Positions 38,601 through 52,089 of a stretch of 64,000 bases of DNA are shown piece after piece. A model generated the notes under the pieces. It was not told the DNA's origin and searched no databases. It saw only the letters and a program-made list of their open reading frames with translations. Source of the stretch: Mytilus trossulus. Lineage: Eukaryota. Location: the NCBI RefSeq assembly GCF_036588685.1, contig NC_086381.1, positions 64,976,001 through 65,040,000 on the forward strand, given 5' to 3'. The first letter of the stretch is position 1. The number at the start of each line of letters is the position of its first letter. A program made the position numbers and the translations under genes.

Positions 38601-40150
38601 TAAATTCTTAATACTAAGTAGTCGAAGGATGAATTTCTTTGAAAGTGAAAATATTTTTGCGGGGACCAAATGGATACCGTAAACGCAGATCAGGCCGCGA
38701 TCACATATACAGCTTTTGTTCAATTCTAAGAAACAGAAAAACACACTAATTGGAAACATTTACAAATGTATGTGCTTTGTAATCTTTTCAAAGGCTTTTA
38801 ACTAAGATGACCAAACTTTCTGTGACATAAACTTATGACTGCCGGAATTCACGGTCATAGGCTTAAAAAAGTTCCAAGTATGTATTCCGTTATGAAAGTC
38901 TGTATCCAGATAAACGAACAATATACAAGATGGTTTTCTGTAGGAAAAGGAGTCCATTAGGGTGATAATTTAGCTCCGACGCTACTCGCCTTATTCATTA
39001 ATGATCCAATACCTGAAAGCTATTCTCTTGGCTGTGAAGTCTTTCTAAAAAAATACTTTTCAGTCAGTGAGTAACTATACGCCGACGACACAGTTCTCAG
39101 TACTAGCGCTACTGCGGGTCAACAAACACAATTAAACACGTTGAACAACTAGTCGAGAATATTGACAAAACTAAAGTACTGCACGTAAAGAAAGCTTCAG
39201 TTGCACAAAGCCACTTTGAGTTAAAAACTGGCGACAAAATAGTTAACTATACTTCAAACTGCCGATATTTAAGTCTTCAAGTGTTAGAAACATTAGACTA
39301 CATCATCAGTATACACCAGTTGATTACTGGGAGCAGTCATGCTTTAGGTTCCCTTGTTATGAAATACTGCATAGCGGTTTATTTACGAGGGTATACAATT
39401 TTTGTTATCAAATAAGGTATTCGAAATATTTTGGCGGTATTTATTTTGGAGGATTCAAAACGTTTATCAATATTCAGGCATATGCACTTTTAAATTAGCG
39501 GAATTATTTTTTGCATTTATGTTCTTTTCCCGAAAATAGGCGAACATTTACACCCCGCGAAAATAACCGACTATACGTTATTACAGTACCGTTAGATTGC
39601 ATTATGATTGATTTAAAACATACTGTGCTGAAGTATGGGGTTAAAAACGTATGAAGGACTAGCTAGACAAATTGCAAATTAGGGCTATATGATCTTTTTC
39701 AGGAGTCGGAAAGTTATACCGATACCAGAAATGACAGGTGAAATGGCATGGATATAAGTCTCTATCCAAAATCCTTGTCAGATGATAAAGCTGTGGTGCC
39801 GTCATGTAAATATGAACTCAAACGAAACAAAAACAAAACAAGAATTGCACAGCAAAGACCTTTTATGTAAATAATAAGTTGTTGTCCAAAAGCACTTGTT
39901 TCCACTTGAGACAAAATGAACTAGAAGTTAGCAAATATGACATCGCTTATATAATATTTGCATGCAATTAAATCAACCTGTATTTGCATCTTTGCGTTTT
40001 CATTACACTAGAAAGATTGATCTTATCAAATCAAGAACTTTTTCCAATGTATCTAGCAGATTATGACATCTTGATAGTAAATACTTATAAATATGGAATA
40101 CAATCAGAACCGTTCTGACCGAAATACCTTTCCTACCTTGAAAAATCATC
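35690..40150 (+). mobile_element. degenerate non-LTR retrotransposon (LINE): ORF1-like, APE and RT remnants
   Basis: APE-like DIIDIQETHL...GYKSFGNN...RGSRGVG (~36975-37120); PCWNNDL (~38018); LNDDISIKE..LKSGKSEEVDNLPNEIL (~38360); GVH*GDNLAPTL..LFIND (~38950); LYADD (~39075). Many stops and frameshifts. Interrupted by family A repeat (37203-37630) and short TIR elements (~36326-36448, ~39365-39580). Confidence 0.85.
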
Positions 40151-40951
40151 GGTCAAATAAGTTTCATATTCACTATTTTGTGTAGTTGCAGGCTGCAAGC
40201 TGGGGATTATTGTCATGACGCTTCTTTCTTATAGATTATATTTTCATTGTAGTTGCTTCTTCAATAGTTTTATTTCGATTACTTTATTCAGTGTCATTAC
40301 TATTTTCGACTTTACTGGAGTTATTGATAGATAATTTCTGCTACATGTATTTACTAATTTCAATGCTCATTGTAAACTTTATTTGATATTTTATACTTTT
40401 TTTTTATTATATAATACCACAACCCTTGACGAAATAACACAAAACTTTTCAATATAATTGTATGTATAAGTGACCCGATTTATCTTATCAGACTTGAATA
40501 TTAAAATTGCAAACAAGAGAAATAATGGTGATTAATTTGAAAAGTGTTTGATCAATCATAAACAGTCCTGTTAACCGCATGAACAGGAAAACATAAGATA
40601 AAAGAATTAGCTCAAAAAGATTAATGTTTATAAAGAGACGTGTGTTTGTTGAATATGCAGTTACAGCCGATTTTATTGAGTGTGTGTGTTTTGCTCGCTA
40701 GGAAGCTGAAACTTGAATTCATTTTAAGGTTAGGTAAACTATTTTCCTCGTAAACTAGTCCGACGAATAACCAATTTATCTCTCTGAAAGGAAGGTGGCA
40801 TACCTTACCTTATAAGGACAGCAAGCTTACAAAACATATTACCTACACACCCAAAAACATCGGCTGAAATGTTCACACTGATTTCGGTTGAAGTATTGCA
40901 CTTTTTCATATTGATATATATATACACATATCAACGAGTTGTATATATATT

Positions 40952-43900
40952 TCAATGTCTAAACACAAGTATGTATAAATCACCTAATTTAAAATAGAAA
41001 TAATAATTCAGATTATATGTAACGTAGAATCCAAATGAACTTCCAACAATGCAATGGTACTTTCCGCCACCATGTCCATCTAGGCTGACTTTAATATGTT
41101 CTGCGATATCGGCCGTATTGCTATAACGATGTTTACCTTCTCGGGAATATTGAATTGTTTTCTTTTGCATATATACAGACATATGCACGGTTCTTATATC
41201 TACAACATACATGTATCAGTTATGCAAAATACTTTTATACAATAGTTATCAAAGGTACCAGGATTATAATTTAATACGCAAAATGCGCGTTTTGTCTTAA
41301 TAAGACTTATCAATGACGCTCAGATCAAAATAGTAATAAAGCTAAACAAGTACAAAATTGAAGACAATTGAGGACCCAAAATTCAAATGAGTTGTGCCAA
41401 ATACAGCTAAGGTAATATATTCTTGGGAAAATCTTTAGTTTTTTTCGAAATATGTTTAGCTTTGTTAACAGGAATTTATAAAAAATGACTATATAATTGA
41501 TATTCATGTCAACACCGAAGTTATGACAAATGATTAATGTATTCCAACAAAAAAATATAACTTAATCACTCAGTTATAACATTCTGATTTCAGTACACTC
41601 GAAACACATTTGTTGAGGTATTCACGTGCCGCTGATTTTATTTGATCTAATAGAAACAATTATGCATTTGTAAAATATTGATTCACATACCAACGTCATC
41701 TGAACTAGACCTTTTCCCAAATCTGTTTTCTAGATGAAATTCTGAAAAAGTATCAAATGTTAACATGCAGTCATTTTCCTCGAAAGTTAAAAAAAATGCC
41801 ATTACATTAATTTGCAAGGAATGTTTGCGCCGCAGATGTTCGTGGATATATGGCACTTGCCATAGCAAACACTTTCTTTTTCCCTTCAATTGTGTAGGTC
41901 TATTTTCAATTAAAACTAGATTTTACTTGCCATGATTAGCCGTGAAAAATCATGATATGGGTTCTTGCAATCTTTATCCGTAATTTCGTGGTGATTTTGC
42001 CTTGGTGTCTTAGAATGGATTGTTGTTTCGAGTTTCAAGTAATTCAATGAATTGAAAAAAAAACGTTAAGTCTTTTTAAAAGTTTAAAATAAATTTTAGA
42101 TATTTCGTTGCTATAAATAGAAAGCTATGCTGAAATGTTTTGCTTGTAGTCAATCCAGAACTTATAAGTGAATATTCTGACAAATCAGCATGCTTTGGTT
42201 TTGTAGAAGAGATCATAATTGACTACAAGTTGGTGAATTTATCGTGGTAAAAGGTATGAAAATTGACTGACAGACTGAATTGAACATCAAAATTTATTAT
42301 ATGACTTCATTCATTAAATGTCGAAATTCGCATCTGGTGAAGTCAAAATATGCTGTAAATATTGCTGTTTAGTTTTTTCAGAACTGGTTTTATTTTATAC
42401 AACTTTTTGTGTTGATATTTGATCTAAGTGTCTTGTCTTGTTCATTGTTCTGTTGTTCTGATAAAGTTAGAATTAACAAATTCTGATACTGTTTGCTCTG
42501 TTACCAGTTACAATTCTGCCTTGGATAAGACAAACGGGTGTTTCAAAGTGACTCTGATAGAGCACCCTTTTAAGGTATAGACTGACATCTTTTCTTTGAT
42601 TTTCTTTTGGAACCGATGTTAACGTCACTTTATGACCTTTGGTTTTCCGTCCCATTGGGGTATTCTCTTTGTTGTGCTTTTCCCATTTGCAATAAGTTAA
42701 TTTTTGTTTTATTGATTAGTATTTGTATGATGCTGTATGATACTTTTTGTATGTGATTGTCGTTTAAAGTGGTATGGGTGTCTTCCTCCATCTTGGATTG
42801 TAAAAAACATAGAACCAAAGGTCCAGATTTTGATCAAGTTAGCAAAATTTGATGCAGAAATGCAGATATTTAATGCGAATTTTCATTTATAAGAACCAAT
42901 TTATAAGTATATAACTTATAAATATAAATATTTTTGCAAATGCTAATTATTATTGGATGTTTTTTTTATTTTTTTGAGTTTGGCATTTTAAGGGGAGCTA
43001 ACTCTAAAACAGTACATTTTCTGAAGGATTCTACATGTAATTTTCATAATTTTGTGATTTATCCGGAAAAAACGTACGGTGACCCTATCTTTTCTTTTAA
43101 TATTCTCAAAGCAGTGTCTGAAAGCTATTTTTTCCTGTAGTATTTAACAATTCTATCATTTTAATTTGTTTCTGATCACAAAATGGTGCTTTTTCCTATA
43201 TAATCCATACAAAATGTTTCAGTTTGTCCTATGCTGTAGCTTTAGAAAATCGCGGTGACCTATCATTTTTATTATATTTTTCAGCATGTATCAATAGATA
43301 CTACATTTTGGCCAAGTATGAACAAATTCTATAATTTTTTTTTTTAGACTCCCATATCACCTTAAAGAGCTCATGTTATGTCTGTTATTATGTACATGTG
43401 TGTCGACTTTATATAAAATAATTTTAACTACTTACAAACTATTCTTTCGTCCGTCAGAATCGATTAAGTATTGTCTAAAGAAAAGACTTGGGATCATTGC
43501 GATGCCTCATTTAAATAGATAAATTTGAGAATGGAAATTGGGAATGTCAAAGAGACAACAACCCGACCAAATAAAAAAACAAGAGCAGAAGGTCATCAAC
43601 AGGTCTTTCCCTAGATTAAATTTAACATTAATCATTTTGAAAACAAGTGACAGTTTTCTGTTAGCAATTATATAAAAAAAAACAGAAATTACAAAATTAG
43701 CTTTTTAGAAGAATCATTTATTATGAAATATAGCTTCACAGTGTAGATACTAATCTGTACGCTATCCGGAAGTCGCGATTTTCGAAGCGAGGATTTCAAA
43801 CTGACTAAAAGAACGGTTTTGTTTTGGTGCCTTTTCTCATCATTTGTTTACTCCTTTATCTCTAAAGTGCTTTTCACATCTTAAATGTATGTATAGCATC

Positions 43901-46900
43901 ATAACTATGAGTAACAGTAACAAAAACATGTAGTAGAATATAAAATATACGTGTGCATCACACCAACTTCATAGGGAAAAGTGAAATTGATGGACAATTT
44001 TGCTCTCGTAGTACAAAGTAAATAATCTTTTATTGCAAATATTTACATCAGTTTACAGTTAAATATATACTGTTTCAATATTCTTAGCGTATTTAAGTAG
44101 AATGTTCGTATTTCAAATAAAAAAATATGCTTTCCTTGAGGATCCCAAAATAAATTACTGTACGATCAGTCTAAAACTGACTGTATTCTAGAAGCGATTT
44201 TAGATTTTTTGTCTGTATGACCAGTCGTGATTTTGAAGAAAAAAAACAACGGCAATTTGAAGGTATATACGTGTCTTTGTGATATTATGATTGTGTCCAT
44301 GGAACTATAACGTGTAATTGCTTTCATCAGACAATGCAAATATATTTCTGATGATTTTTGTAGACGGCAAACTAATCTTATTTTTGATCCGTCAGTCTTA
44401 TTTAAAATGAAATGACTAAAACGCAAAACATGATTGGACTTTGTATTAATGTGTCGTTGCAGTTATCTGTTTAACTATTACATTTTTAGACTATTTACAC
44501 CGTCTGTCGTTGACGAATTGGTGAGAACATACATCAAGTTTGTCTCTTTTAAAATGACAAAAAATAGATAGAGAAAGTTTTGTTTAAAAACTTTAGGTAT
44601 TGAGGAAAGAATTGACGAAATTATACCCCGACACCTATAGTCCATGTTTTTGAAAAAAATAAACCACCAAAAACCTAAATTATAGGTACACAGGGGCATC
44701 ATTTAAAAACGAATATGAGGAAGTTTTATTAATATATGGTAAGTTTTTGAAAGTTGCGTATAGTAAATGGGTACCATCCAATAAGGTAGTGGAAAAGTCC
44801 TTATCATGGAAATAGAAAACTGCAGAATTTTCTAAAAATCAAAATAAGAGGTGCACAATTGAATTAAATGATAAGGAATCTGAAAAAGATTGATTAAATT
44901 ATGACAAGTGTCTGAAAGAAGTTGTGGGTATAAAATAGGTACGCCCAATATAAGGTTATGACAGTCCGTATTTAAGATAGAGAAACGTCAAAAATATTTT
45001 TACCAAAAATCCGAAATAGAAGGTCCATAATAAATTAATTGATTAAAATTGGAGCAATTTTAGAAAAAAAATAACAATTGTTTTTGGAGGTCACGGTTGG
45101 AAATACCTGATGGGTGCCCCCATATAATGCAATGTTCAAGTCCGTATCTTATATAAAGAAACCCCATTAAAGATTTTAATAAAATTCTTAATATATTCCT
45201 TTTTTATATAAATAAGGCCGTTAATTTTCTCGTTTGAATTGTTTTACAGTGTCATTTCGGGGCCTTTTATAGCTGACTTTGTGGTATTGGCTTTGCTCAT
45301 TGTTGACGGCTGTACAGTGATCTATATTTGTTGATGTCTGTGCAATTTTGGTCTCTTGTTGACGGTTGTCTCATTGGCAATCATACTGCATCTTCTTTTT
45401 TTATATTATCATTTATGCTAAGGAATCCGAGAAAAATTAATTAATAGTTTAATACCAGTGACGGATTCAAGAAAATTGGGATCCGGCGGTTTGAAACTCT
45501 TTTTTTAACTTTCAATGCATTTGTATGGGAACATATTGAAAATGGATTGGACCCCCTCAAAATGTCGGGAAACCCCAATGTATATTAAGTGGTTTATGAG
45601 GAGATGCGCTTACAAAACCGGCGAAACATGTTGTACCGGTCCAACGGACAGACGGATAGACAGACGAACGGAAAGACGGACTTCGTTATCATTATAAACC
45701 ACCGCTTTACAAAGTGGTGTACAATTTAGTGTGAAAGAGACAGATCTACATCCAAAGCAAAGTGAAGGAATTGTAATCAATTATAGGCTACAGTACGGCC
45801 TCGAATGTTTGTAAATACATGCATTTTTATATAACAATTAAATTTGTGTGTTTGTACAATTTTAAGTATAACGGAGAACATTTTTGAAACTTATATAAAC
45901 AAACAAACCTTCCTCTTATTTCAGCAACATTCAAACATCATTATACTTACTGTTGTAAGTCGATTACACCCTATCAAGCTTAAACATGTTTGATAAGTTT
46001 TCAGGATGTGAATTTATTAAAATATATTTGTGTTATTTAGAGAAATGCCATCTTCTAATGTATCGTAAAAACTTGAAATCACCACTAGAATACAGTGAAA
46101 TAAAGACTGAGCATTCAGTTTCAAAATATACAAGCGAGACTGATCGTACAGTGAGAAATTCAAACAAGTGTAATTTTCTTATTTCTGGCTTCAAAGATCT
46201 GGCTGAAACTTTTACCACCACTTAAAATATACTTTATCTAGTTAATTAAGTCTGGTTTTTACGTGAATTTGTACAGTAAGGGTGCAAAAACATTGTTTTT
46301 ATGTTAACCGACTGATATTCCGTAGTGATGCACTTTAAAATCTCTTGATTAAGGCAAAGATACGAATAATGAATATTCTCAATTTAATTCTAAACCATTT
46401 GTGAATATCGATGTCAGCTGAATTAATCATTAAGCAATGTACAGATGAACATCTTACTGTTTAATATAGTATATCCAACAAATTTAAAATGTGATCCAAA
46501 AAGTTCTCGCTTCGAAAATCGCGACTTCCGGATATCGTACAGAATAGTGTCTACATTGTGAGCTTGCAAGCTTCAAATAGTTTTCATCTTTTGTATATCC
46601 CTTTAAAACTCATCTGGTCTAAAGAGCAAAGTGAGCATTTATTTTATTTTTTTCCAAATGTTTTTGGGATGCAAGTGAATGCTTAGTTCAATAAGTATAT
46701 TGTTAATCTCCGCATATGTTTATATGAGGTTCAAAGCAATTACTTGAACAAAAGTAGTCATCACCGTATGGTAAACTGAATATATTACAAAAAATATTCT
46801 GTTCTTTCATAAAATACTTCATCAATATTTAAATGATAAAAGACTATACAGAATTATATACTGTCACAATAAAATACAAGGATGCAATACATAGTGATTT

Positions 46901-49289
46901 GGAATACTACCATTTACGTCTGTTGTCGCACTGAAAGCCTGTGCAGTGTCACCTTTTTCGTCTTTCGAAAGGTGGAAGGCTGAAAAGAAAGAAAAAAATA
47001 ATTTTACATATCGATTTCGATCCATACATGCTTTCAGCGATTTCTAAGCTGATAAAACAATTTTGTTCAACTGTTTGATGCAGTTGCAATGTTTAACGTT
47101 TCCTCCCTTCTCTTTTTGATATCTAGAAATTGTAACGAATTATAAAGCAAAAATATGAGAATTAAAATCATATTCCTGTCCATCATTTTTAGACAATCAA
47201 ACAAGCATTTTTCAAAGGTTGACCGACACACATGTAGGTTGCATTTCTGTAAATATTGACAATGCAATTTCCGATAGCAACTGCTATTACGGCTAAATCT
47301 GTACCATTTTTACTATAAAGTTTTAAATCTTATCCTAGAATTGAAAGTTCATATGCACCACATTTTATTCCAAAGGTCAACATATAGGGCTGTGCGGCAT
47401 ATTTTCAACATTTATATGCTCTGAACTTCTCAGAGTTTAAACTAACACTGATTTTCTTAACTACCCCTACCTCGAATGAAAGGTAACCACAGATTTCAAT
47501 GTAAACAATATGCACGTGTTTATTTACTGGTAACATTCCCAAGTTCTGTCTCTGTGATATGGAACACAGAGAGTATAACTGGGAACCAGTATGTAAACAA
47601 AATTAAGTTTAGAACTATGAATATAGATCTCCCCAAAGAGGCGCGTTTTGAGAAACAGCTGTAATTACAAAGCGCAACTTATGAATTAGTCTTACATATT
47701 TTAGAAATAAGTGTTGAATAAAATGAATTTGTCGATATTTTGTGAAGAATTTACAATTTTACAAGTCAAAAGACTTCAGATATAAATGATGTTTTTGTGA
47801 AGAATTTTCAATTTTACAAGTCAAAAGACTTCAGATATAAATGATGTTTTCAATATTTTCAATTTTTTAATCCATTATATCATTATTATTGAAATGAAAA
47901 CGAGTACAGTATGTATGCGTATGTAGTCAGTAACATGCCAAAGTAATTAACAACATTTCAGGTACGTGTATTCTTAAATTTTGTTTTTGTTGTGTTCAAA
48001 AATGCCAAATGCAATAATCTTAACTTTAATTACTTTTGTACTTTGAACAAATAAAATTCATATCATACAGAATAACAATGACACCTGTTAGAACATGTAG
48101 AATGAAACTTCCATATGTGCGCTATTTTATATGTTATGACTATGAACCCTCTCAATCGCATTTTTATCCTAATGTTTAGCATAATTTGTTTTAGGTTTCG
48201 ATTCTTATCATGCTTAAAAAGTCTTTGGTTTCAAATATTCGGCATTTTTTTTAGCGTTCACGATGTAGGCCTATCCTGATAAATGCTTTGCATGAATGCA
48301 ATTTATAACGTGTGGTTTCCATTTTTTAAGATTGTCTTGTTGTATCACAGCTCGGTGTGATATTTTCCGGGATTATATATGATCAATAAAAGTCTAAAAC
48401 TTCTATTTCAGGGGATTATAAATAAATCAAAATTTCTCTCTGTTTGGTAAAAATACCCAGACAAATAAGTTATATGTATATGCATAGTTTTTCTATTTTA
48501 TTTCTATTTTCTATTTAAATATGTTAAACCATATTTACTTCTAAACAATATGTTTGTGAGCGCTAAATATGCAATGCTCTTCTAACCTTGAACAGTGGAT
48601 GTAACAGAACAGTATAAGAGCAAATTTTATAAACTAGCTTCACTCAAAACATCAGTACGAAGCACAAAAAAAACAAAATAATTGTCAGAATTTATTTCAT
48701 TTTCACATTGAAATATCGACACACCTCACAGATACACGTTACCTGGAAAATAACCATTTGAAAAACTTGCAGAACAATGGAATGATTTGTACCTATCGTG
48801 TCTAGTAGAAACGATTGTTCATAACTTAAACGATACATCATGTATTTATATCACGGGCAACTTCAACTCAAATTACGAATTGTTTCTATACTAATTATTT
48901 TTATAAAATAGTTAAGATTGTTAATACTTATTGCGTTACACATGCTGCGCTTTCTGGGCAGTCAAAAGCTTTATTTCCAGTCATAATAGAAGTATCCTCA
49001 TAACCAAAATTACGCAAATGTAATTGTTCTTTTGAGGCATGCAATTACATTTACTAAAGATTAAGTAAGAGACTGCAGGGCAAATTCAATAGAACTGAAA
49101 CATTGAATGTAAATCGTTTGTTTTCATAATTTATATAAACAAGTTTAAAATTGAGAAAAAAAAAGAAAAATAAAGTTTGAATGTATTATAAGGTTAATCT
49201 AAAATTAACAAATTTATAATTTAATAAAACTTACCATTGGAAAGGCCCTTGATTGATAGAAAAAATAATATAGCTCCACATAGTTTCAT
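40952..49289 (-). CDS. 140-aa prepro-protein: signal peptide + pro-region (RF-G-KR) + divergent dynein light chain LC8-type domain
   Basis: Exons 49289-49235 (MKLCGAILFFLSIKGLSN, G|GTAAGT), 46979-46911, 41741-41691 (EFHLENRFGKRSSSDDV, G|GTATGT) and 41199-40952; all introns phase 1, total 423 nt. The last exon (IRTVHMS..MQ...DIAEHIK..LD....YHCIVGSSFGFYVTY....YFYFKLGDLYILVFR) aligns by eye to LC8 (IKNADMS..MQ...DIAAHIKKEFD....WHCIVGRNFGSYVTH...FIYFYLG..AILLFK). The LC8 exon is high confidence; the link to the signal exon is inferred. Confidence 0.72.
41240..41530 (-). mobile_element. Penelope-like terminal repeat with degenerate hammerhead
   Basis: Same family as 26100-26300(+) and 59070-59240(-); hammerhead core mutated to TTGATAA...AAAA. 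Confidence 0.7.
43737..46560. mobile_element. Transib/RAG-like non-autonomous DNA transposon (2824 bp)
   Basis: 55-bp TIRs with 4 mismatches, beginning CACAGTG (left) and CACAATG (right); exact 5-bp TSD AGCTT at 43732-43736 and 46561-46565. No transposase ORF recognised. Confidence 0.85.
44620..45725 (+). mobile_element. Helentron-associated (DINE-1-like) element nested in the Transib-like element
   Basis: (GACG/GACA)n tract at 45645-45680 followed by terminal stem-loop CACCGCTTT-ACA-AAGTGGTG. The left boundary is approximate. Confidence 0.5.
47738..47850. repeat. 55-bp tandem duplication (2 copies)
   Basis: TTTTGTGAAGAATTT...AGATATAAATGATGTTTT repeated almost exactly. Confidence 0.9.
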
Positions 49290-52089
49290 CTTGTTCTTTT
49301 AAGACTGGAAATAAAAAACGAAAAAAATATTAGGATAATTTGACAAACTCTTTTTGCAATCAAAGTGATCCTTTCCTAAATTCTATTTATATACATACGG
49401 ACAGGAAGAATAAATCGCTTTCAAATTAATCCATACTTAACTTTCAAATGTTTAATTGGTTAAAAGAATATATATCAAGTTTAAGATTAAGCTATGAGGA
49501 AGCAGTTTAGAATCAAATGATTCATGAAGTTGTTAATGTTGTGAAAATGTAGACAACTTAAAGAAAAGAAAAATATTATACAGATTAAAAATGTTGAAAG
49601 AGATAATAATTATGAAATCGAGCTAAGAATTTTAAAGTTTGAAATATATTTTATAAATTGTCCACTACCGATTTACTCTCCAAATACAACTACATCTGAC
49701 AATGCATACAATTTAGAACGGAAATGAGGAATGTGTCAAAGAGACATCAACCCGACAAAAGAGCAGAAAACAGCCGGAGCCCACCAATAGGTGCTCAACA
49801 CAGCAAGAAAAATCCCACACCCAGATGTTGGCTTCAGCAGGCGCAAAAACATAATGTTTACGGCACACCAAACTCAAAAACATACAAATAAACTAAAATT
49901 TGAAGTATTAGGCGCATTATATATTGGAAACATATAAAATTTTTTTGATTTTCAAAGATTTCATCTGGAAAGAATTGTCATAAAAACCAACAGTTAATAT
50001 TGACATACCAAAGTTGAAAAATAAGTTAACAATTATGACTTCATTGAGATGAAAAAATAAAAAAAATATAAGAACATTCTTGATTGTTGACAAAAAAATC
50101 AAATCAGCGAATACCTTCAAATGTAATTCACACTTTAAAAACGATCACAATTAAAACATTTTAGCCCCTTTTTTTCTAAGTATTTATATTATTATTTGCA
50201 TTTAAGCATCAGTAAGAAGTTTTTTTGAAACATCTATATAACCAAAACATTGGTTTCTAGTATTTGTTCGATATTTGTGAAGATTGATAGTAAAAGAGGA
50301 TATCACAATCTCAGTAAGTTTGAGCTTACATACTTTATAATATTCTTTTTTAATAGCTATTTGTTGAACAAGTTAATGATAAATATAAATAAAACAATGT
50401 GAGATTCAAATAATTATATTATTAAGTCTACAAGTGATCCCAATGAGATAACAAGATAAATCTTAGAAAAAAAACCAGTACTAGATATAGGAAGATGTGG
50501 TGTGTTTGCCAATGAGACAACTCTCCATCCAAATAACAATTTAAAAAGTAAACCATTATATGATCTAGTAATAGTATATCTAAATTTAGGACGATTTTAA
50601 CCTTGCATATTTTTTATCAATTACTGTGGACAAAAATTTTTATCAAGGAAATGACATTTTAATTTAAAATGGACATAACTTTGCCTTGAATTGACAGTAG
50701 TTTTCACACACTTTATAAAGTAAAAATACAGACTTAAACTTTTATGATTTATCGCGGTTAAGCTATTTTACTGTCGACTTGATTTTGTCTCGATTATTAA
50801 ATTACCAAATTGAGGCAAATTGCATATGATATATTCAACAGGTTATAGTTTGTTATCTTGAAAGAATCTGTATGAAATTTTAAGTACTTCTAATATTTAG
50901 CATCAATTGCTTTACGTTTACAATCAGGAAGATAACGTTCAACTAGACTTAGTTACCAATGGCTGTCGAAGTCGAATCTTCCTGGTATTTAAATTACAGT
51001 TAGATAAGTTCAAACGGAATATTCCGAAGGAAACCATGAGTGGTACTTGATTTTGTGTTAACATTGTCAAGTACTATATAACTTCCGTTTCTTTCATCTT
51101 CGATATAAGAAAAAACTCAATACCATATAAACTGAGGTATACACATATAATTCAATATCAGCAGAATTAAAACTATGTCGTTTAATCTAAAACTCAATCT
51201 GTTTTAGGCTCTCAGTTCCACTTTTATTTATCAAATACAAATGTATCTGAAAGACAATGCCGTGCATATCATTAGTAAAATACAACCATAAATATAAGAA
51301 AACATGTCATTTTCTATATTGAAATGAAAGTTCTCACACATGAATTTCCTACTTCTCTCAAAATTTGAACACTCTATTAAAGATCTAGACCTTGTTTTCT
51401 GGTATTTGTAAATCCAAGATGAAGGAAGACACCCTATCTACCTTCCTTAAATATTCTCAAAAGCCTGTTTTATCTCGCAAAATAAAATTGAAAAAGCCAC
51501 AGAAGAACATTTTTCTAAAACTGTTTTTACATAACTATGTAATATATAAATTAAGGACTCTACCTCATTTAATTCTTTACATATGGAGCTATATGACTAT
51601 ATTGACACTCGGACGTCGTCCTCGGTTAATAAAATATGAACAGGCCCATACATTAGGTATTGATCTCGTCAAATGCCCATGATGGATAAACATTTATTTA
51701 GCGGGCTGTTAAGTATATAATAATGTTGTAAAAAGACAATCAAATATAAATAAATATATATGGAGGTGGTGTCCCCAACATATATCTAGATAGATGTCTA
51801 AAGATTTAAACCCAAGTGCTTCACGAAATCACTTTATAAATTAGTAACATCAGTTTTATCAATAACCAAAGCTCCTAAGTCATTATATTCTAGATCTGAA
51901 GTGAATCAGATGTGGAAACGAAAAAGTTCAAAAGATCTTTTTGCGTATTTAAAAAAACTCTTTCATCTTTGCAGCAGTACTAAACTTTTGACTTTTCTAA
52001 ATACTAGTACTAGTATTATATATTCCAAACAAACAAAATCATTCATATATTGATACATGTAGGTGTTTTTTTGTTTCATAAAAAAGAAT

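What the first reader, a model, noticed from the sequence alone, without database searches (positions are those of the whole stretch)
40952..49289. Candidate secreted dynein-light-chain (LC8-fold) protein made as a prepro-precursor
Seen: the 86-aa ORF at 40952-41212 is a divergent LC8/DYNLL-type domain, but its 5' end contains an acceptor (CTGAT branch-like motif...TGTTGTAG|AT at 41200). Three upstream exons join it in frame through phase-1 introns, giving MKLCGAILFFLSIKGLSNA/FHLSKDEKGDTAQAFSATTDVNEFHLENRF-GKR/SSSDDVDIRTVHMS...LVFRH (140 aa). Established: LC8 proteins are highly conserved cytosolic dimeric hubs that bind linear motifs and have no signal peptide; to my recollection the secreted nematode Ground-like domain is grouped with the same fold. 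Inference: a cytosolic peptide-binding scaffold has been redeployed to the secretory pathway, with convertase cleavage at KR releasing an ~88-aa mature LC8-like domain, almost exactly canonical LC8 length. It could act extracellularly (immune, mucus, byssus or gamete). I know of no description of this architecture in molluscs.
Basis: partly seen in the sequence, partly recalled or inferred. Interest (0 to 1): 0.88.

Follow-up and report, generated by a model that had tools for sequence, protein, structure and literature searches.

The report
Mussel LC8 protein with secretion leader
A real, expressed four-exon mussel gene puts a secretion leader and a cleavable spacer in front of a domain (LC8) that otherwise works only inside cells, and it belongs to a small mussel-specific family, so mussels probably export a protein-clamping module whose outside targets are unknown.

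Summary
The ORF at 40952-41212 (minus strand) is a full-length Dynein_light/LC8 domain (Pfam 79.5 bits against a cut-off of 29.1).

Contigs of three public runs from two studies carry the joins 41199/41691 and 41741/46911 with GT..AG ends. The exon 1 join is supported indirectly.

The architecture is not a one-off. At least nine relatives have a hydrophobic leader, a 30-60 aa spacer, a KR site (RSR or KSR in one sub-branch), and then an 84-92 aa LC8 domain. All named relatives are Mytilus.

The predicted mature protein, S53-H140, is 88 aa and starts where canonical LC8 starts. The model has the LC8 fold (TM 0.94-0.96) and the canonical dimer interface (0.90 against 0.01 for the best control, possibly from memory). 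Several residues that I recall as lining the peptide groove are replaced.

Most likely it is a secreted, convertase-processed LC8-like dimer with a new ligand preference. Secretion, cleavage, tissue and ligand are all untested. I found no paper describing it. I class it as a new variant of a known kind, of moderate to high interest.

The scan also noted the RF-G-KR motif of this gene separately. That motif is not conserved in relatives.

The parts
49384..49391 (-). TATA-like box (TATAAATA), about 31 nt upstream of the furthest 5' reach inferred for transcripts
   Evidence: Read directly from the sequence. The position relative to the 5' end is inferred from the length of the X3 contig. Function not tested.
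49235..49353 (-). Exon 1: short 5' UTR plus ATG at 49289. Codes M1-N18 and the first base of A19, i.e. the hydrophobic leader. GTAAGT donor, phase 1.
   Evidence: for sequence and donor. Part of NCBI protein P0001. Matches residues 1-16 of P0152 at 69%. The 5' end at 49353 is only inferred from 119 extra letters in the X3 contig. There is no ATG between 49353 and 49289, and A stands at -3 of the ATG.
46980..49234 (-). Intron 1 (phase 1, GT..AG)
   Evidence: Borders read from the sequence.
46911..46979 (-). Exon 2 (69 nt, phase 1-1): end of the leader (A19) and the first part of the spacer, F20-N41
   Evidence: Join 41741>46911 seen in X1, X2 and X3. Matches residues 19-38 of P0152.
41742..46910 (-). 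Intron 2 (5,169 nt), full of repeats. Another note of this scan places a transposon at 43732-46565.
   Evidence: The joint skips exactly 5169 letters with CT..AC ends on the + strand, in three runs. Very high contig depths at 43400-43600 and 45200-45400 point to multi-copy repeats.
41691..41741 (-). Exon 3 (51 nt, phase 1-1): E42-V58. Holds the G50-K51-R52 site (41718-41710) and the Ser-rich start of the mature protein (S53 at 41709-41707).
   Evidence: Both flanking joins seen in three runs. The KR site is conserved in relatives.
41200..41690 (-). Intron 3 (491 nt, phase 1, GT..AG)
   Evidence: Joint 41199>41691 in X1, X2 and X3. The paralogue at C12:26.66 Mb has an intron at the same place and phase.
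40952..41199 (-). Exon 4, coding part: D59-H140 and the stop (40952-40954). This is the whole LC8 domain.
   Evidence: Pfam Dynein_light 77.8-79.5 bits. Ungapped alignment to human DYNLL1 residues 8-87. AlphaFold2 pLDDT above 90 and Foldseek TM 0.94-0.96 to solved LC8.
40013..40951 (-). 3' UTR of about 0.9 kb. The end is inferred, not seen.
   Evidence: The X1 and X2 contigs run 987 and 914 letters beyond 41000. That part lay outside the laid stretch. I found no clear AATAAA.

Best explanation
This is a real, transcribed four-exon gene of Mytilus trossulus. It belongs to a small gene family that seems confined to Mytilus and encodes a prepro-form of an LC8 (DYNLL-type) domain.

The likely sequence of events is as follows.

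1. The 19-residue leader takes the nascent chain into the ER and is cut off after A19.
2. The 33-residue spacer is removed at K51-R52 by a kexin-type proprotein convertase. The site is a plain dibasic one without Arg at P4, which fits a prohormone-convertase site better than a furin site.
3. The 88-residue product, S53-H140, starts at the position that aligns with residue 1 of canonical LC8. It folds as an LC8 strand-swapped homodimer and leaves the cell, or is stored in secretory granules.
4. It then binds extended peptide segments of unknown extracellular partners. Its specificity should differ from the cytosolic TQT motif, because several groove positions are replaced.

Shown here: the gene, two of its three splice joins, the domain identity, and the conservation of the architecture. 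Predicted: the fold and the dimer. Inferred: ER entry, both cleavages, export and ligand binding.
For: **Gene and splicing.** See, as set out in the observation check.

**Family.**
- P0152, P0004, P0153, P0160, P0007 and P0012 each have a leader, a spacer and a basic site in front of the LC8 domain. P0156 and the N-terminally incomplete P0009 keep the KR site and the domain; the hydrophobic stretch of P0156 is weaker (2.0).
- Every member that carries a name is from M. edulis, M. californianus, M. galloprovincialis or M. trossulus.
- An exhaustive HMMER scan of 1.84 billion cluster representatives gave only 16 hits below 1e-10. Beyond these the hits look canonical.
- On a maximum-likelihood tree, all canonical and other LC8 rows lie on one side of a branch with 94/93 support. 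The leader-bearing proteins lie on the other side.

**Own-genome paralogues.**
- C12:26.66 Mb has a signal exon with a GTAAGT donor about 15 kb upstream, and the same phase-1 intron in front of the LC8 exon.
- C12:51.46 Mb and C6:10.16 Mb carry KHKR and KRQKR in the same exon as the domain.

**Which part is constrained.** Between M. californianus P0160 and its M. trossulus orthologue, the LC8 domain is about 96% identical. The leader is 71% identical and the spacer exon 62%. The domain is therefore the conserved product.

**Fold and dimer.**
- AlphaFold2 with 130 sequences gives pLDDT above 90 for residues 55-140 and below 50 for 1-49.
- Foldseek finds solved LC8 chains at TM 0.94-0.96 and rmsd 0.8-1.2.
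- The homodimer score is 0.90 against 0.01 for the best of 3 controls. The partner's pLDDT is at least 94 and the three runs agree in 100% of contacts. This mark was reached by 21 of 30 proteins solved as pairs and 0 of 23 solved as single chains.
- The interface is residues 86-96 and 105-119, which correspond to DYNLL1 34-44 and 53-67.

**No retention or anchor signal.** There is no KDEL-type end, and the hydrophobic core is only about 11 residues long.
Against: - No signal-peptide or cleavage predictor was available, and no proteomic or localisation data exist for any member.
- The mature domain has a single Cys, the buried canonical one. It has no N-glycosylation sequon and no disulfide pattern of the kind common in secreted proteins.
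- Hydrophobic N-termini arise easily in this AT-rich genome (31% G+C).
- The dimer pass may reflect the model's memory of solved LC8 dimers.
- The window copy sits on a longer branch than its nearest relative (0.31 against 0.086). It has His where about 90% of LC8 domains have Asp (residue 64). That could mean relaxed constraint.
- In X1, the contig over exons 3-4 has a depth figure of 411, while the exon2/exon3 join has 44. A different 5' part in most transcripts of that sample is therefore not excluded.
- The tissue of expression is unknown, because run names are coded.
Confidence: 0.68

Rival explanations
1. Prohormone reading. The active product is a small peptide cut from the spacer. In this copy the spacer ends in RF-G-KR, which would give a C-terminal RF-amide. 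The LC8 domain would then be a carrier or packaging partner, as neurophysin is for vasopressin.
For: The sequence signal peptide, peptide, G-K-R, folded domain of about 90 aa is the layout of the vasopressin/neurophysin precursor (established knowledge, not tested here). The plain KR site without P4 Arg fits prohormone convertases. The start of the spacer, just after the leader, shows a loosely conserved motif in several paralogues. All introns are phase 1, so skipping exon 2 would keep the frame and give a very short RF-amide peptide. The depth difference in X1 leaves that possibility open.
Against: Gly before KR occurs only in the window copy. Relatives have H, Q, N or Y there, and their spacers do not end in RF. 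Between orthologues the spacer is the least conserved part (62%) and the LC8 domain the most (about 96%). That is the opposite of what a peptide-hormone precursor shows.
Confidence: 0.1
2. The protein enters the secretory pathway but is not exported. It would work inside the ER, Golgi, lysosome-like granules or dense-core vesicles, for example by clamping disordered cargo proteins during packaging.
For: It has the same leader and KR evidence as the main reading. The dibasic site suggests the regulated pathway. LC8 acts as a dimerisation clamp on disordered chains (abstract of PMC3078936, seen).
Against: The protein has no retention motif or membrane anchor. Default routing of such a protein is export.
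Confidence: 0.1
3. The leader is not used as a signal peptide. The protein acts in the cytosol like other LC8 paralogues, either because the leader fails or because transcripts start at the in-frame ATG at 41212 inside intron 3.
For: An in-frame ATG lies 13 nt before the acceptor. Several database ORFs of relatives start the same way (P0002, P0154, P0161). The mature domain lacks disulfides and glycosylation sites.
Against: Spliced contigs join exon 4 to exons 3 and 2 in three runs. The intronic ATG is absent in the M. trossulus C12:26.66 Mb paralogue, so it is not conserved. The ATG-initiated short ORFs are what a gene caller makes of genomic or unspliced contigs. Leader and KR site are kept across paralogues that are only 35-45% identical.
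Confidence: 0.07
4. The window copy is a young, dispensable duplicate drifting towards loss. It is expressed but has no function of its own.
For: The branch is long (0.31). Asp is replaced by His at a position conserved in about 90% of LC8 domains. No M. edulis or M. californianus protein closer than 64-70% was found. Truncated LC8-like fragments exist elsewhere in the genome (C12:56.31 and 56.33 Mb).
Against: The reading frame is intact over four exons with all splice sites good. Spliced contigs occur in three runs. The fold is predicted with pLDDT above 90.
Confidence: 0.05

Closest known systems
Canonical LC8 / DYNLL dynein light chain (Pfam PF01221; e.g. human DYNLL1, PDB 1CMI, 3ZKF)
   Same: Same domain over its whole length: an ungapped alignment of residues 60-139 to DYNLL1 8-87. 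Same predicted fold (TM 0.94-0.96) and the same predicted dimer interface. The mature length is 88 aa against 89 aa.
   Different: About 35% identity, compared with the near-identical canonical copies that this genome also has on contig C8. It has an N-terminal leader, a spacer and a KR site, which canonical LC8 lacks. Positions that I recall as lining the peptide groove are replaced (DYNLL1 numbering): R60 to S/T, N61 to S, S64 to F/Y, H68 to Y, Y77 to K, A82 to Y, E35 to T. The role of those positions is from memory and was not tested here.
Flatworm tegumental EF-hand + dynein-light-chain proteins (TAL family, e.g. CsTegu20.6)
   Same: A lineage-specific expansion that uses a DLC domain outside the dynein motor, at a body surface.
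   Different: Those proteins have EF-hands in front of the DLC domain and no signal peptide or membrane segment (PMC5372573). The mussel proteins have no EF-hand; Dynein_light is the only Pfam family over its cut-off. They do have a leader.
Nematode Ground-like (grl) domain proteins (Pfam PF04155)
   Same: Signal peptide, then a variable region, then a conserved C-terminal domain of about 75 aa (PMC1636047). Two mussel paralogues give weak Ground-like hits over most of that profile (P0160: 19.5 bits, E 0.0016; P0153: 16.7 bits, E 0.012). The only near hit of that profile in the whole mussel genome is an LC8-like exon of this family.
   Different: All scores are below the cut-off of 35.4, and the window protein gives no hit. 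Ground-like domains have several conserved cysteines and are described as confined to nematodes. The mussel domain has one Cys. I found no paper linking the two families.
Vasopressin/oxytocin-neurophysin type precursors (analogy only)
   Same: The order signal peptide, short peptide, G-K-R, folded domain of about 90 aa.
   Different: There is no sequence or fold relation. The G and the peptide end are not conserved in relatives.

Membership tests
LC8 / Dynein_light (PF01221) | Profile match above Pfam's gathering score over the full domain | tested here: met
   79.5 bits (ORF) and 77.8 bits (P0001) against a cut-off of 29.1, profile positions 2-85 of 86.
LC8 / Dynein_light (PF01221) | LC8 fold: strand, two helices, then a four-stranded sheet | tested here: met
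   In the AlphaFold2 model, residues 55-140 have pLDDT above 90. Foldseek against PDB gives LC8 chains at TM 0.94-0.96 and rmsd 0.8-1.2. The Atlas model gives TM 0.91-0.95. This is a prediction, not a solved structure.
LC8 / Dynein_light (PF01221) | Strand-swapped homodimer | tested here: inconclusive
   Score 0.90 against 0.01 for the best of 3 controls. The mark was reached by 21 of 30 proteins solved as pairs and 0 of 23 solved as single chains. Partner pLDDT is at least 94, and the runs agree in 100% of contacts. The interface lies at the canonical place. Because LC8 dimers are solved many times over, the pass may be from memory.
LC8 / Dynein_light (PF01221) | Conserved groove residues that bind TQT-type linear motifs | tested here: not met
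   F62, Y65, T67, Y75 and F86 are kept. R60, N61, S64, H68, Y77, A82 and E35 are replaced, mostly in the same way across the family. Which residues line the groove is from my memory of the solved complexes.
LC8 / Dynein_light (PF01221) | Cytosolic protein without targeting signal; subunit of dynein and hub of cytosolic or nuclear partners | tested here: not met
   The N-terminal leader and basic site are conserved across the family. Association with dynein cannot be tested with these tools.
Secreted prepro-proteins processed by kexin-type convertases | Cleavable N-terminal signal peptide: basic start, hydrophobic core of 7-15 residues, small residues at -3 and -1 | tested here: met
   Rule-based only. 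K2, then a hydrophobic core at residues 3-13, then S-N-A before F20. The best 9-residue hydropathy is 2.8, and 2.7-3.3 in six full-length relatives. No trained predictor was run.
Secreted prepro-proteins processed by kexin-type convertases | Conserved dibasic site at the border of the mature domain | tested here: met
   KR is present in P0001, P0152, P0004, P0007, P0012, P0156 and P0009, and in the genomic paralogues at C12:51.46 Mb and C6:10.16 Mb. One sub-branch has RSR or KSR instead. Cleavage itself was not tested.
Amidated neuropeptide precursors (RF-amide type) | Gly before the basic site and a peptide end conserved among orthologues | tested here: not met
   G-K-R and the RF end occur only in the window copy.
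Ground-like domain (PF04155) | Profile match above the gathering score, and multiple conserved cysteines | tested here: not met
   P0001 gives no hit. Paralogues score 16.7-19.5 bits against a cut-off of 35.4. The genome-wide best is 21.8 bits at E 0.3. The domain has one Cys, whereas Ground-like domains have several conserved Cys (PMC1636047).
Flatworm tegumental EF-hand + DLC proteins | EF-hand domain in front of the DLC domain | tested here: not met
   Eight family members were scanned. Dynein_light is the only Pfam family above its cut-off and no EF-hand was found.

The most novel reading that the evidence does not exclude
Mytilus has evolved the first known extracellular LC8 hubs. These would be exported 88-aa LC8 dimers that clamp or cross-link linear motifs in disordered extracellular proteins (mucus, byssus, shell matrix, haemolymph or gamete coats), or in proteins of microbes. 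The groove would be re-tuned away from TQT. The family would turn over quickly between species, as immune or surface genes do. A bolder extension is that the nematode Ground-like domain is a distant branch of the same exported LC8 lineage.
Probability: 0.3. Interest if true: 0.78.

Novelty: new variant of a known kind. Interest (0 to 1): 0.62.

Why it matters
LC8 is among the most conserved eukaryotic proteins. To my knowledge it is treated as a purely cytosolic and nuclear dimerisation hub.

A family that keeps the fold and the dimer interface, but sits behind a secretion leader and a convertase site, would show that this hub module can be moved outside the cell. It would also give LC8 research a natural set of re-tuned grooves to study.

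For mussel biology it adds an uncharacterised, lineage-restricted, apparently fast-evolving secreted family. Database records call its members 'uncharacterized protein' or, misleadingly, 'dynein light chain 1, cytoplasmic-like'.

All three introns are phase 1. This fits the classic exon-shuffling route by which domains join the secreted repertoire.

Tried and rejected
**Joined model.** I never joined the exons myself. The 140-aa protein used in searches, folds and the dimer test is the database record P0001, which came back from a search with the exon-4 ORF given by reference.

**Runs that gave little or nothing.**
- Folding P0001 without an alignment gave a useless model (pLDDT 33). I repeated it with 130 sequences.
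I therefore could not fetch the DNA of the relatives, compute dN/dS, or see a full transcript contig.
The loose end at 46979 was not among the rows shown.
- Run X6, the only run on record as RNA, has no depth on the exons.
- The word-index search found only the protein itself. The profile version found only Mytilus and unnamed members.
- The bacterial-type promoter scan is meaningless for an animal gene, and I ignore it.
- No clear polyadenylation signal was found near the inferred 3' end.
- The Atlas feature hits (0.78-0.82, nematode and flatworm clusters) are below the level at which they count.
- Paper searches for a signal-peptide-bearing LC8, in Mytilus or anywhere else, found nothing relevant.
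- The window holds no second family member.
- A 192-aa ORF next to the truncated copies on C12 has no Pfam hit.
I reran it by reference.

**Readings rejected.** The RF-amide reading and the cytosolic-isoform reading are rejected as main explanations, for the reasons given under the rival explanations.

Full report
**What is there**

The window is G000:C9:64976001-65040000 of a 1.3-Gb genome with 31% G+C. The organism is Mytilus trossulus, judged from the identical NCBI protein found.

On the minus strand, the 86-aa ORF at 40952-41212 matches Pfam Dynein_light over nearly the whole profile (E 2.5e-22, 79.5 bits, cut-off 29.1).

| Exon | Coordinates |
|---|---|
| 1 | 49289-49235 |
| 2 | 46979-46911 |
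| 3 | 41741-41691 |
| 4 | 41199-40952 |

**The gene model**

A search with the exon-4 ORF by reference returned one protein, P0001 (140 aa, 'uncharacterized protein LOC134684137 [Mytilus trossulus]'). I used that database record from then on.

- Contigs of three public runs (X1, X2, X3; two studies) laid on 41000-46999 show the joins 41199>41691 and 41741>46911. The ends are CT..AC on the + strand, which is GT..AG on the gene's strand. There is no mismatch over exon 4.
- These runs are only guessed to be RNA, but the spliced form itself argues for RNA.
- Low-depth minus-strand contigs inside intron 2 look like pre-mRNA.
- The exon 1 join was outside the stretch I could lay. It rests on three things. 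P0001 contains it. The X2 and X3 contigs carry 70 and 119 further letters 5' of exon 2. And P0152, a 141-aa relative predicted from a 1,132-nt contig, must come from a spliced transcript and matches each of the four window exons.
- The ATG at 49289 is the first in the inferred transcript and has A at -3. A TATAAATA box lies at 49391-49384.

**A family, not a one-off**

An exhaustive HMMER scan of 1.84 billion cluster representatives gave only 16 hits below 1e-10. The closest ones share the architecture:

1. a hydrophobic leader;
2. a poorly conserved spacer of 30-60 aa;
3. KR, or RSR/KSR in one sub-branch;
4. a short Ser-rich stretch;
5. an LC8 domain that typically ends in VFR followed by H or R.

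Every member that carries a name is from M. edulis, M. californianus, M. galloprovincialis or M. trossulus. The rest are unnamed transcript or metagenome contigs.

The M. trossulus genome has five near-identical canonical LC8 genes on C8. Besides the window gene it holds divergent copies at C12:26.66 Mb, C12:51.46 Mb, C6:10.16 Mb and C8:58.83 Mb, and two truncated copies on C12.

- The C12:26.66 Mb copy has a signal exon with a GTAAGT donor about 15 kb upstream, and an intron of the same phase at the same place before the LC8 exon.
- Two other copies carry KHKR or KRQKR in the same exon as the domain.
- On a maximum-likelihood tree, all canonical and other LC8 rows fall on one side of a branch with 94/93 support, and the leader-bearing proteins on the other. 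The tree is unrooted, so this is compatible with one origin but does not prove it.

**Which part is under constraint**

Between M. californianus P0160 and its M. trossulus orthologue, identity differs sharply by region:

| Region | Identity |
|---|---|
| LC8 domain | about 96% |
| Leader | 71% |
| Spacer exon | 62% |

This is the pattern of a prepro-protein whose mature domain is the product. It argues against the spacer peptide being the active part.

**The mature protein**

G-K-R is residues 50-52, so the product after cleavage is S53-H140. It is 88 aa, with pI 8.7 and one Cys. In relatives the product is 84-92 aa.

Residues 60-139 align to human DYNLL1 residues 8-87 without a gap. S53 therefore aligns with residue 1 of canonical LC8, and the KR site sits exactly at the domain's natural N-terminus.

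With a 130-sequence alignment, AlphaFold2 gives pLDDT above 90 for residues 55-140 and below 50 for 1-49. Foldseek finds solved LC8 chains at TM 0.94-0.96 and rmsd 0.8-1.2.

A two-copy prediction of residues 55-140 scored 0.90 against 0.01 for the best of three controls.

- The mark was reached by 21 of 30 proteins solved as pairs and 0 of 23 solved as single chains.
- Partner pLDDT was at least 94, and the runs agreed in 100% of contacts.
- The interface is residues 86-96 and 105-119, the canonical LC8 interface.
- Because many LC8 dimers are solved, this shows likeness rather than proof.

**The groove**

In DYNLL1 numbering, the family keeps I8, M13, A39, K43, C56, V58, G59, F62 and F86. It mostly keeps H55, Y65, T67 and Y75.

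It replaces R60 (S/T), N61 (S, invariant in the family), S64 (F/Y), H68 (Y), Y77 (K), A82 (Y) and E35 (T). From my memory of the solved peptide complexes, these positions line the groove or cap the conserved Gln of the TQT motif. That assignment is recalled, not tested.

If it is right, the fold and the dimer are kept but the ligand preference has changed.

**How it most likely works**

The most likely course is ER entry through the leader, removal of the spacer at KR by a kexin-type convertase, and export (or granule storage) of an LC8-like dimer that binds extended segments of unknown partners.

The site lacks Arg at P4 in most members. By established knowledge of convertase preferences, that fits prohormone convertases better than furin.

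There is no retention motif and no membrane anchor. All three introns are phase 1, the phase class typical of shuffled exons of secreted proteins (established knowledge).

I put this reading at about 0.68. The gene and its architecture are near certain. Export, cleavage and binding are inferred.

**Rivals**

- **RF-amide idea.** It was noted separately by this scan (s1-827536) and fails the conservation test. Gly before KR and the RF end occur only in this copy.
- **Cytosolic isoform from the ATG at 41212.** It is not supported. That ATG is not conserved in the C12:26.66 Mb paralogue, and the contigs are spliced.
- **Open point.** In X1 the exon 3-4 contig has a depth figure of 411, while the exon2/exon3 join has 44. 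This may be an allelic break in a very polymorphic species, or a second 5' form such as in-frame skipping of exon 2. I could not resolve it.
- **Relaxed constraint.** The window copy has a longer branch than its nearest relative, and His at a position where about 90% of LC8 domains have Asp. Some relaxation in this particular copy is therefore possible.

**Comparison with what is known**

- **Canonical LC8.** It is a member by profile and predicted fold. It differs in its targeting signals and its groove.
- **Flatworm tegumental EF-hand + DLC proteins.** These are another non-motor use of the domain, but they have no signal peptide (PMC5372573).
- **Nematode Ground-like proteins.** They share the layout of signal peptide, variable region and small C-terminal domain. 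They are described as nematode-only and Cys-rich (PMC1636047). Two mussel paralogues give sub-threshold Ground-like hits. The best near hit of that profile in the whole mussel genome is an exon of this family, but at E 0.3. The window protein gives none. This is a lead, not membership.

I found no paper describing an LC8 domain behind a signal peptide. The sequences exist in databases only as uncharacterised or mislabelled entries.

**Limits**

- No trained signal-peptide or cleavage predictor was available.
- There are no proteomic data and no tissue information, because run names are coded.
- Only two of the three joins were seen directly.
- The restriction to Mytilus rests on protein databases, not on a search of other mollusc genomes.

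**Verdict**

This is a new variant of a known kind, the LC8 domain recruited into a prepro-secretory architecture. It is lineage-restricted and its function is unknown. Interest 0.62.

Noticed in passing
window 41710-41724 (-), exon 3: The spacer of this copy ends in R-F-G-K-R. After cleavage and amidation this would leave a C-terminal RF-amide. The scan also noted it as a separate finding. Relatives lack both the Gly and the RF end.
   Followed up: partly
window 41200-41400, 43400-43600, 45200-45400 (introns 3 and 2): Contig depth figures in the thousands in all four runs, with many loose ends at 41241, 43579 and 45385-45406. These look like multi-copy repeats transcribed from elsewhere in the genome. 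Another note of the scan places a transposon at 43732-46565.
   Followed up: no
window 41741 / 46911 in run X1: The contig over exons 3-4 has a depth figure of 411 and starts exactly at the 5' edge of exon 3. The exon2/exon3 join has 44. This may be an allelic break or an alternative 5' part. Skipping exon 2 would stay in frame.
   Followed up: no
L010 and L011 (G000:C12:56330228-56330392 and 56311142-56311306): Two identical truncated LC8-like fragments (65 aa, second half of the domain only) lie in opposite orientation about 19 kb apart. Each sits next to a 192-aa ORF with a YIDD motif that has no Pfam hit. They are probably dead copies inside a duplicated segment.
   Followed up: partly
P0010 (M. 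edulis CAG2192640.1): This gene model fuses a truncated LC8-like domain of this family to a partial C1q domain and an unrelated tail. It is probably a merged model, but it suggests that a family member lies next to a C1q gene in M. edulis.
   Followed up: partly
P0004 and P0007 (M. edulis XP_071139099 and XP_071139098): Two family members with consecutive accession numbers lie on one 84-Mb chromosome of M. edulis. They are only 45% and 40% identical to the window protein, and neither has a close copy in the M. trossulus assembly. This hints at tandem paralogues with presence/absence differences between species.
   Followed up: partly
L001-L005 (G000:C8:32.56-32.58 Mb and 21.73-21.74 Mb): Five near-identical canonical LC8 genes, each with the whole 89-aa coding region in one open frame, sit in two tandem groups. 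That is an unusually high copy number for this hub protein.
   Followed up: no
P0160 and P0153; L037 (G000:C12:26657807-26658022): Sub-threshold matches to the nematode Ground-like profile PF04155 (19.5 and 16.7 bits). The canonical mussel LC8 gives no such hit.
   Followed up: partly
residues 53-59 of P0001 and the same place in relatives: The first residues after KR are Ser-rich and often followed by acidic residues (S-x-E or S-x-D). This resembles the target motif of the Golgi casein kinase. The comparison is recalled from memory and was not tested.
   Followed up: no
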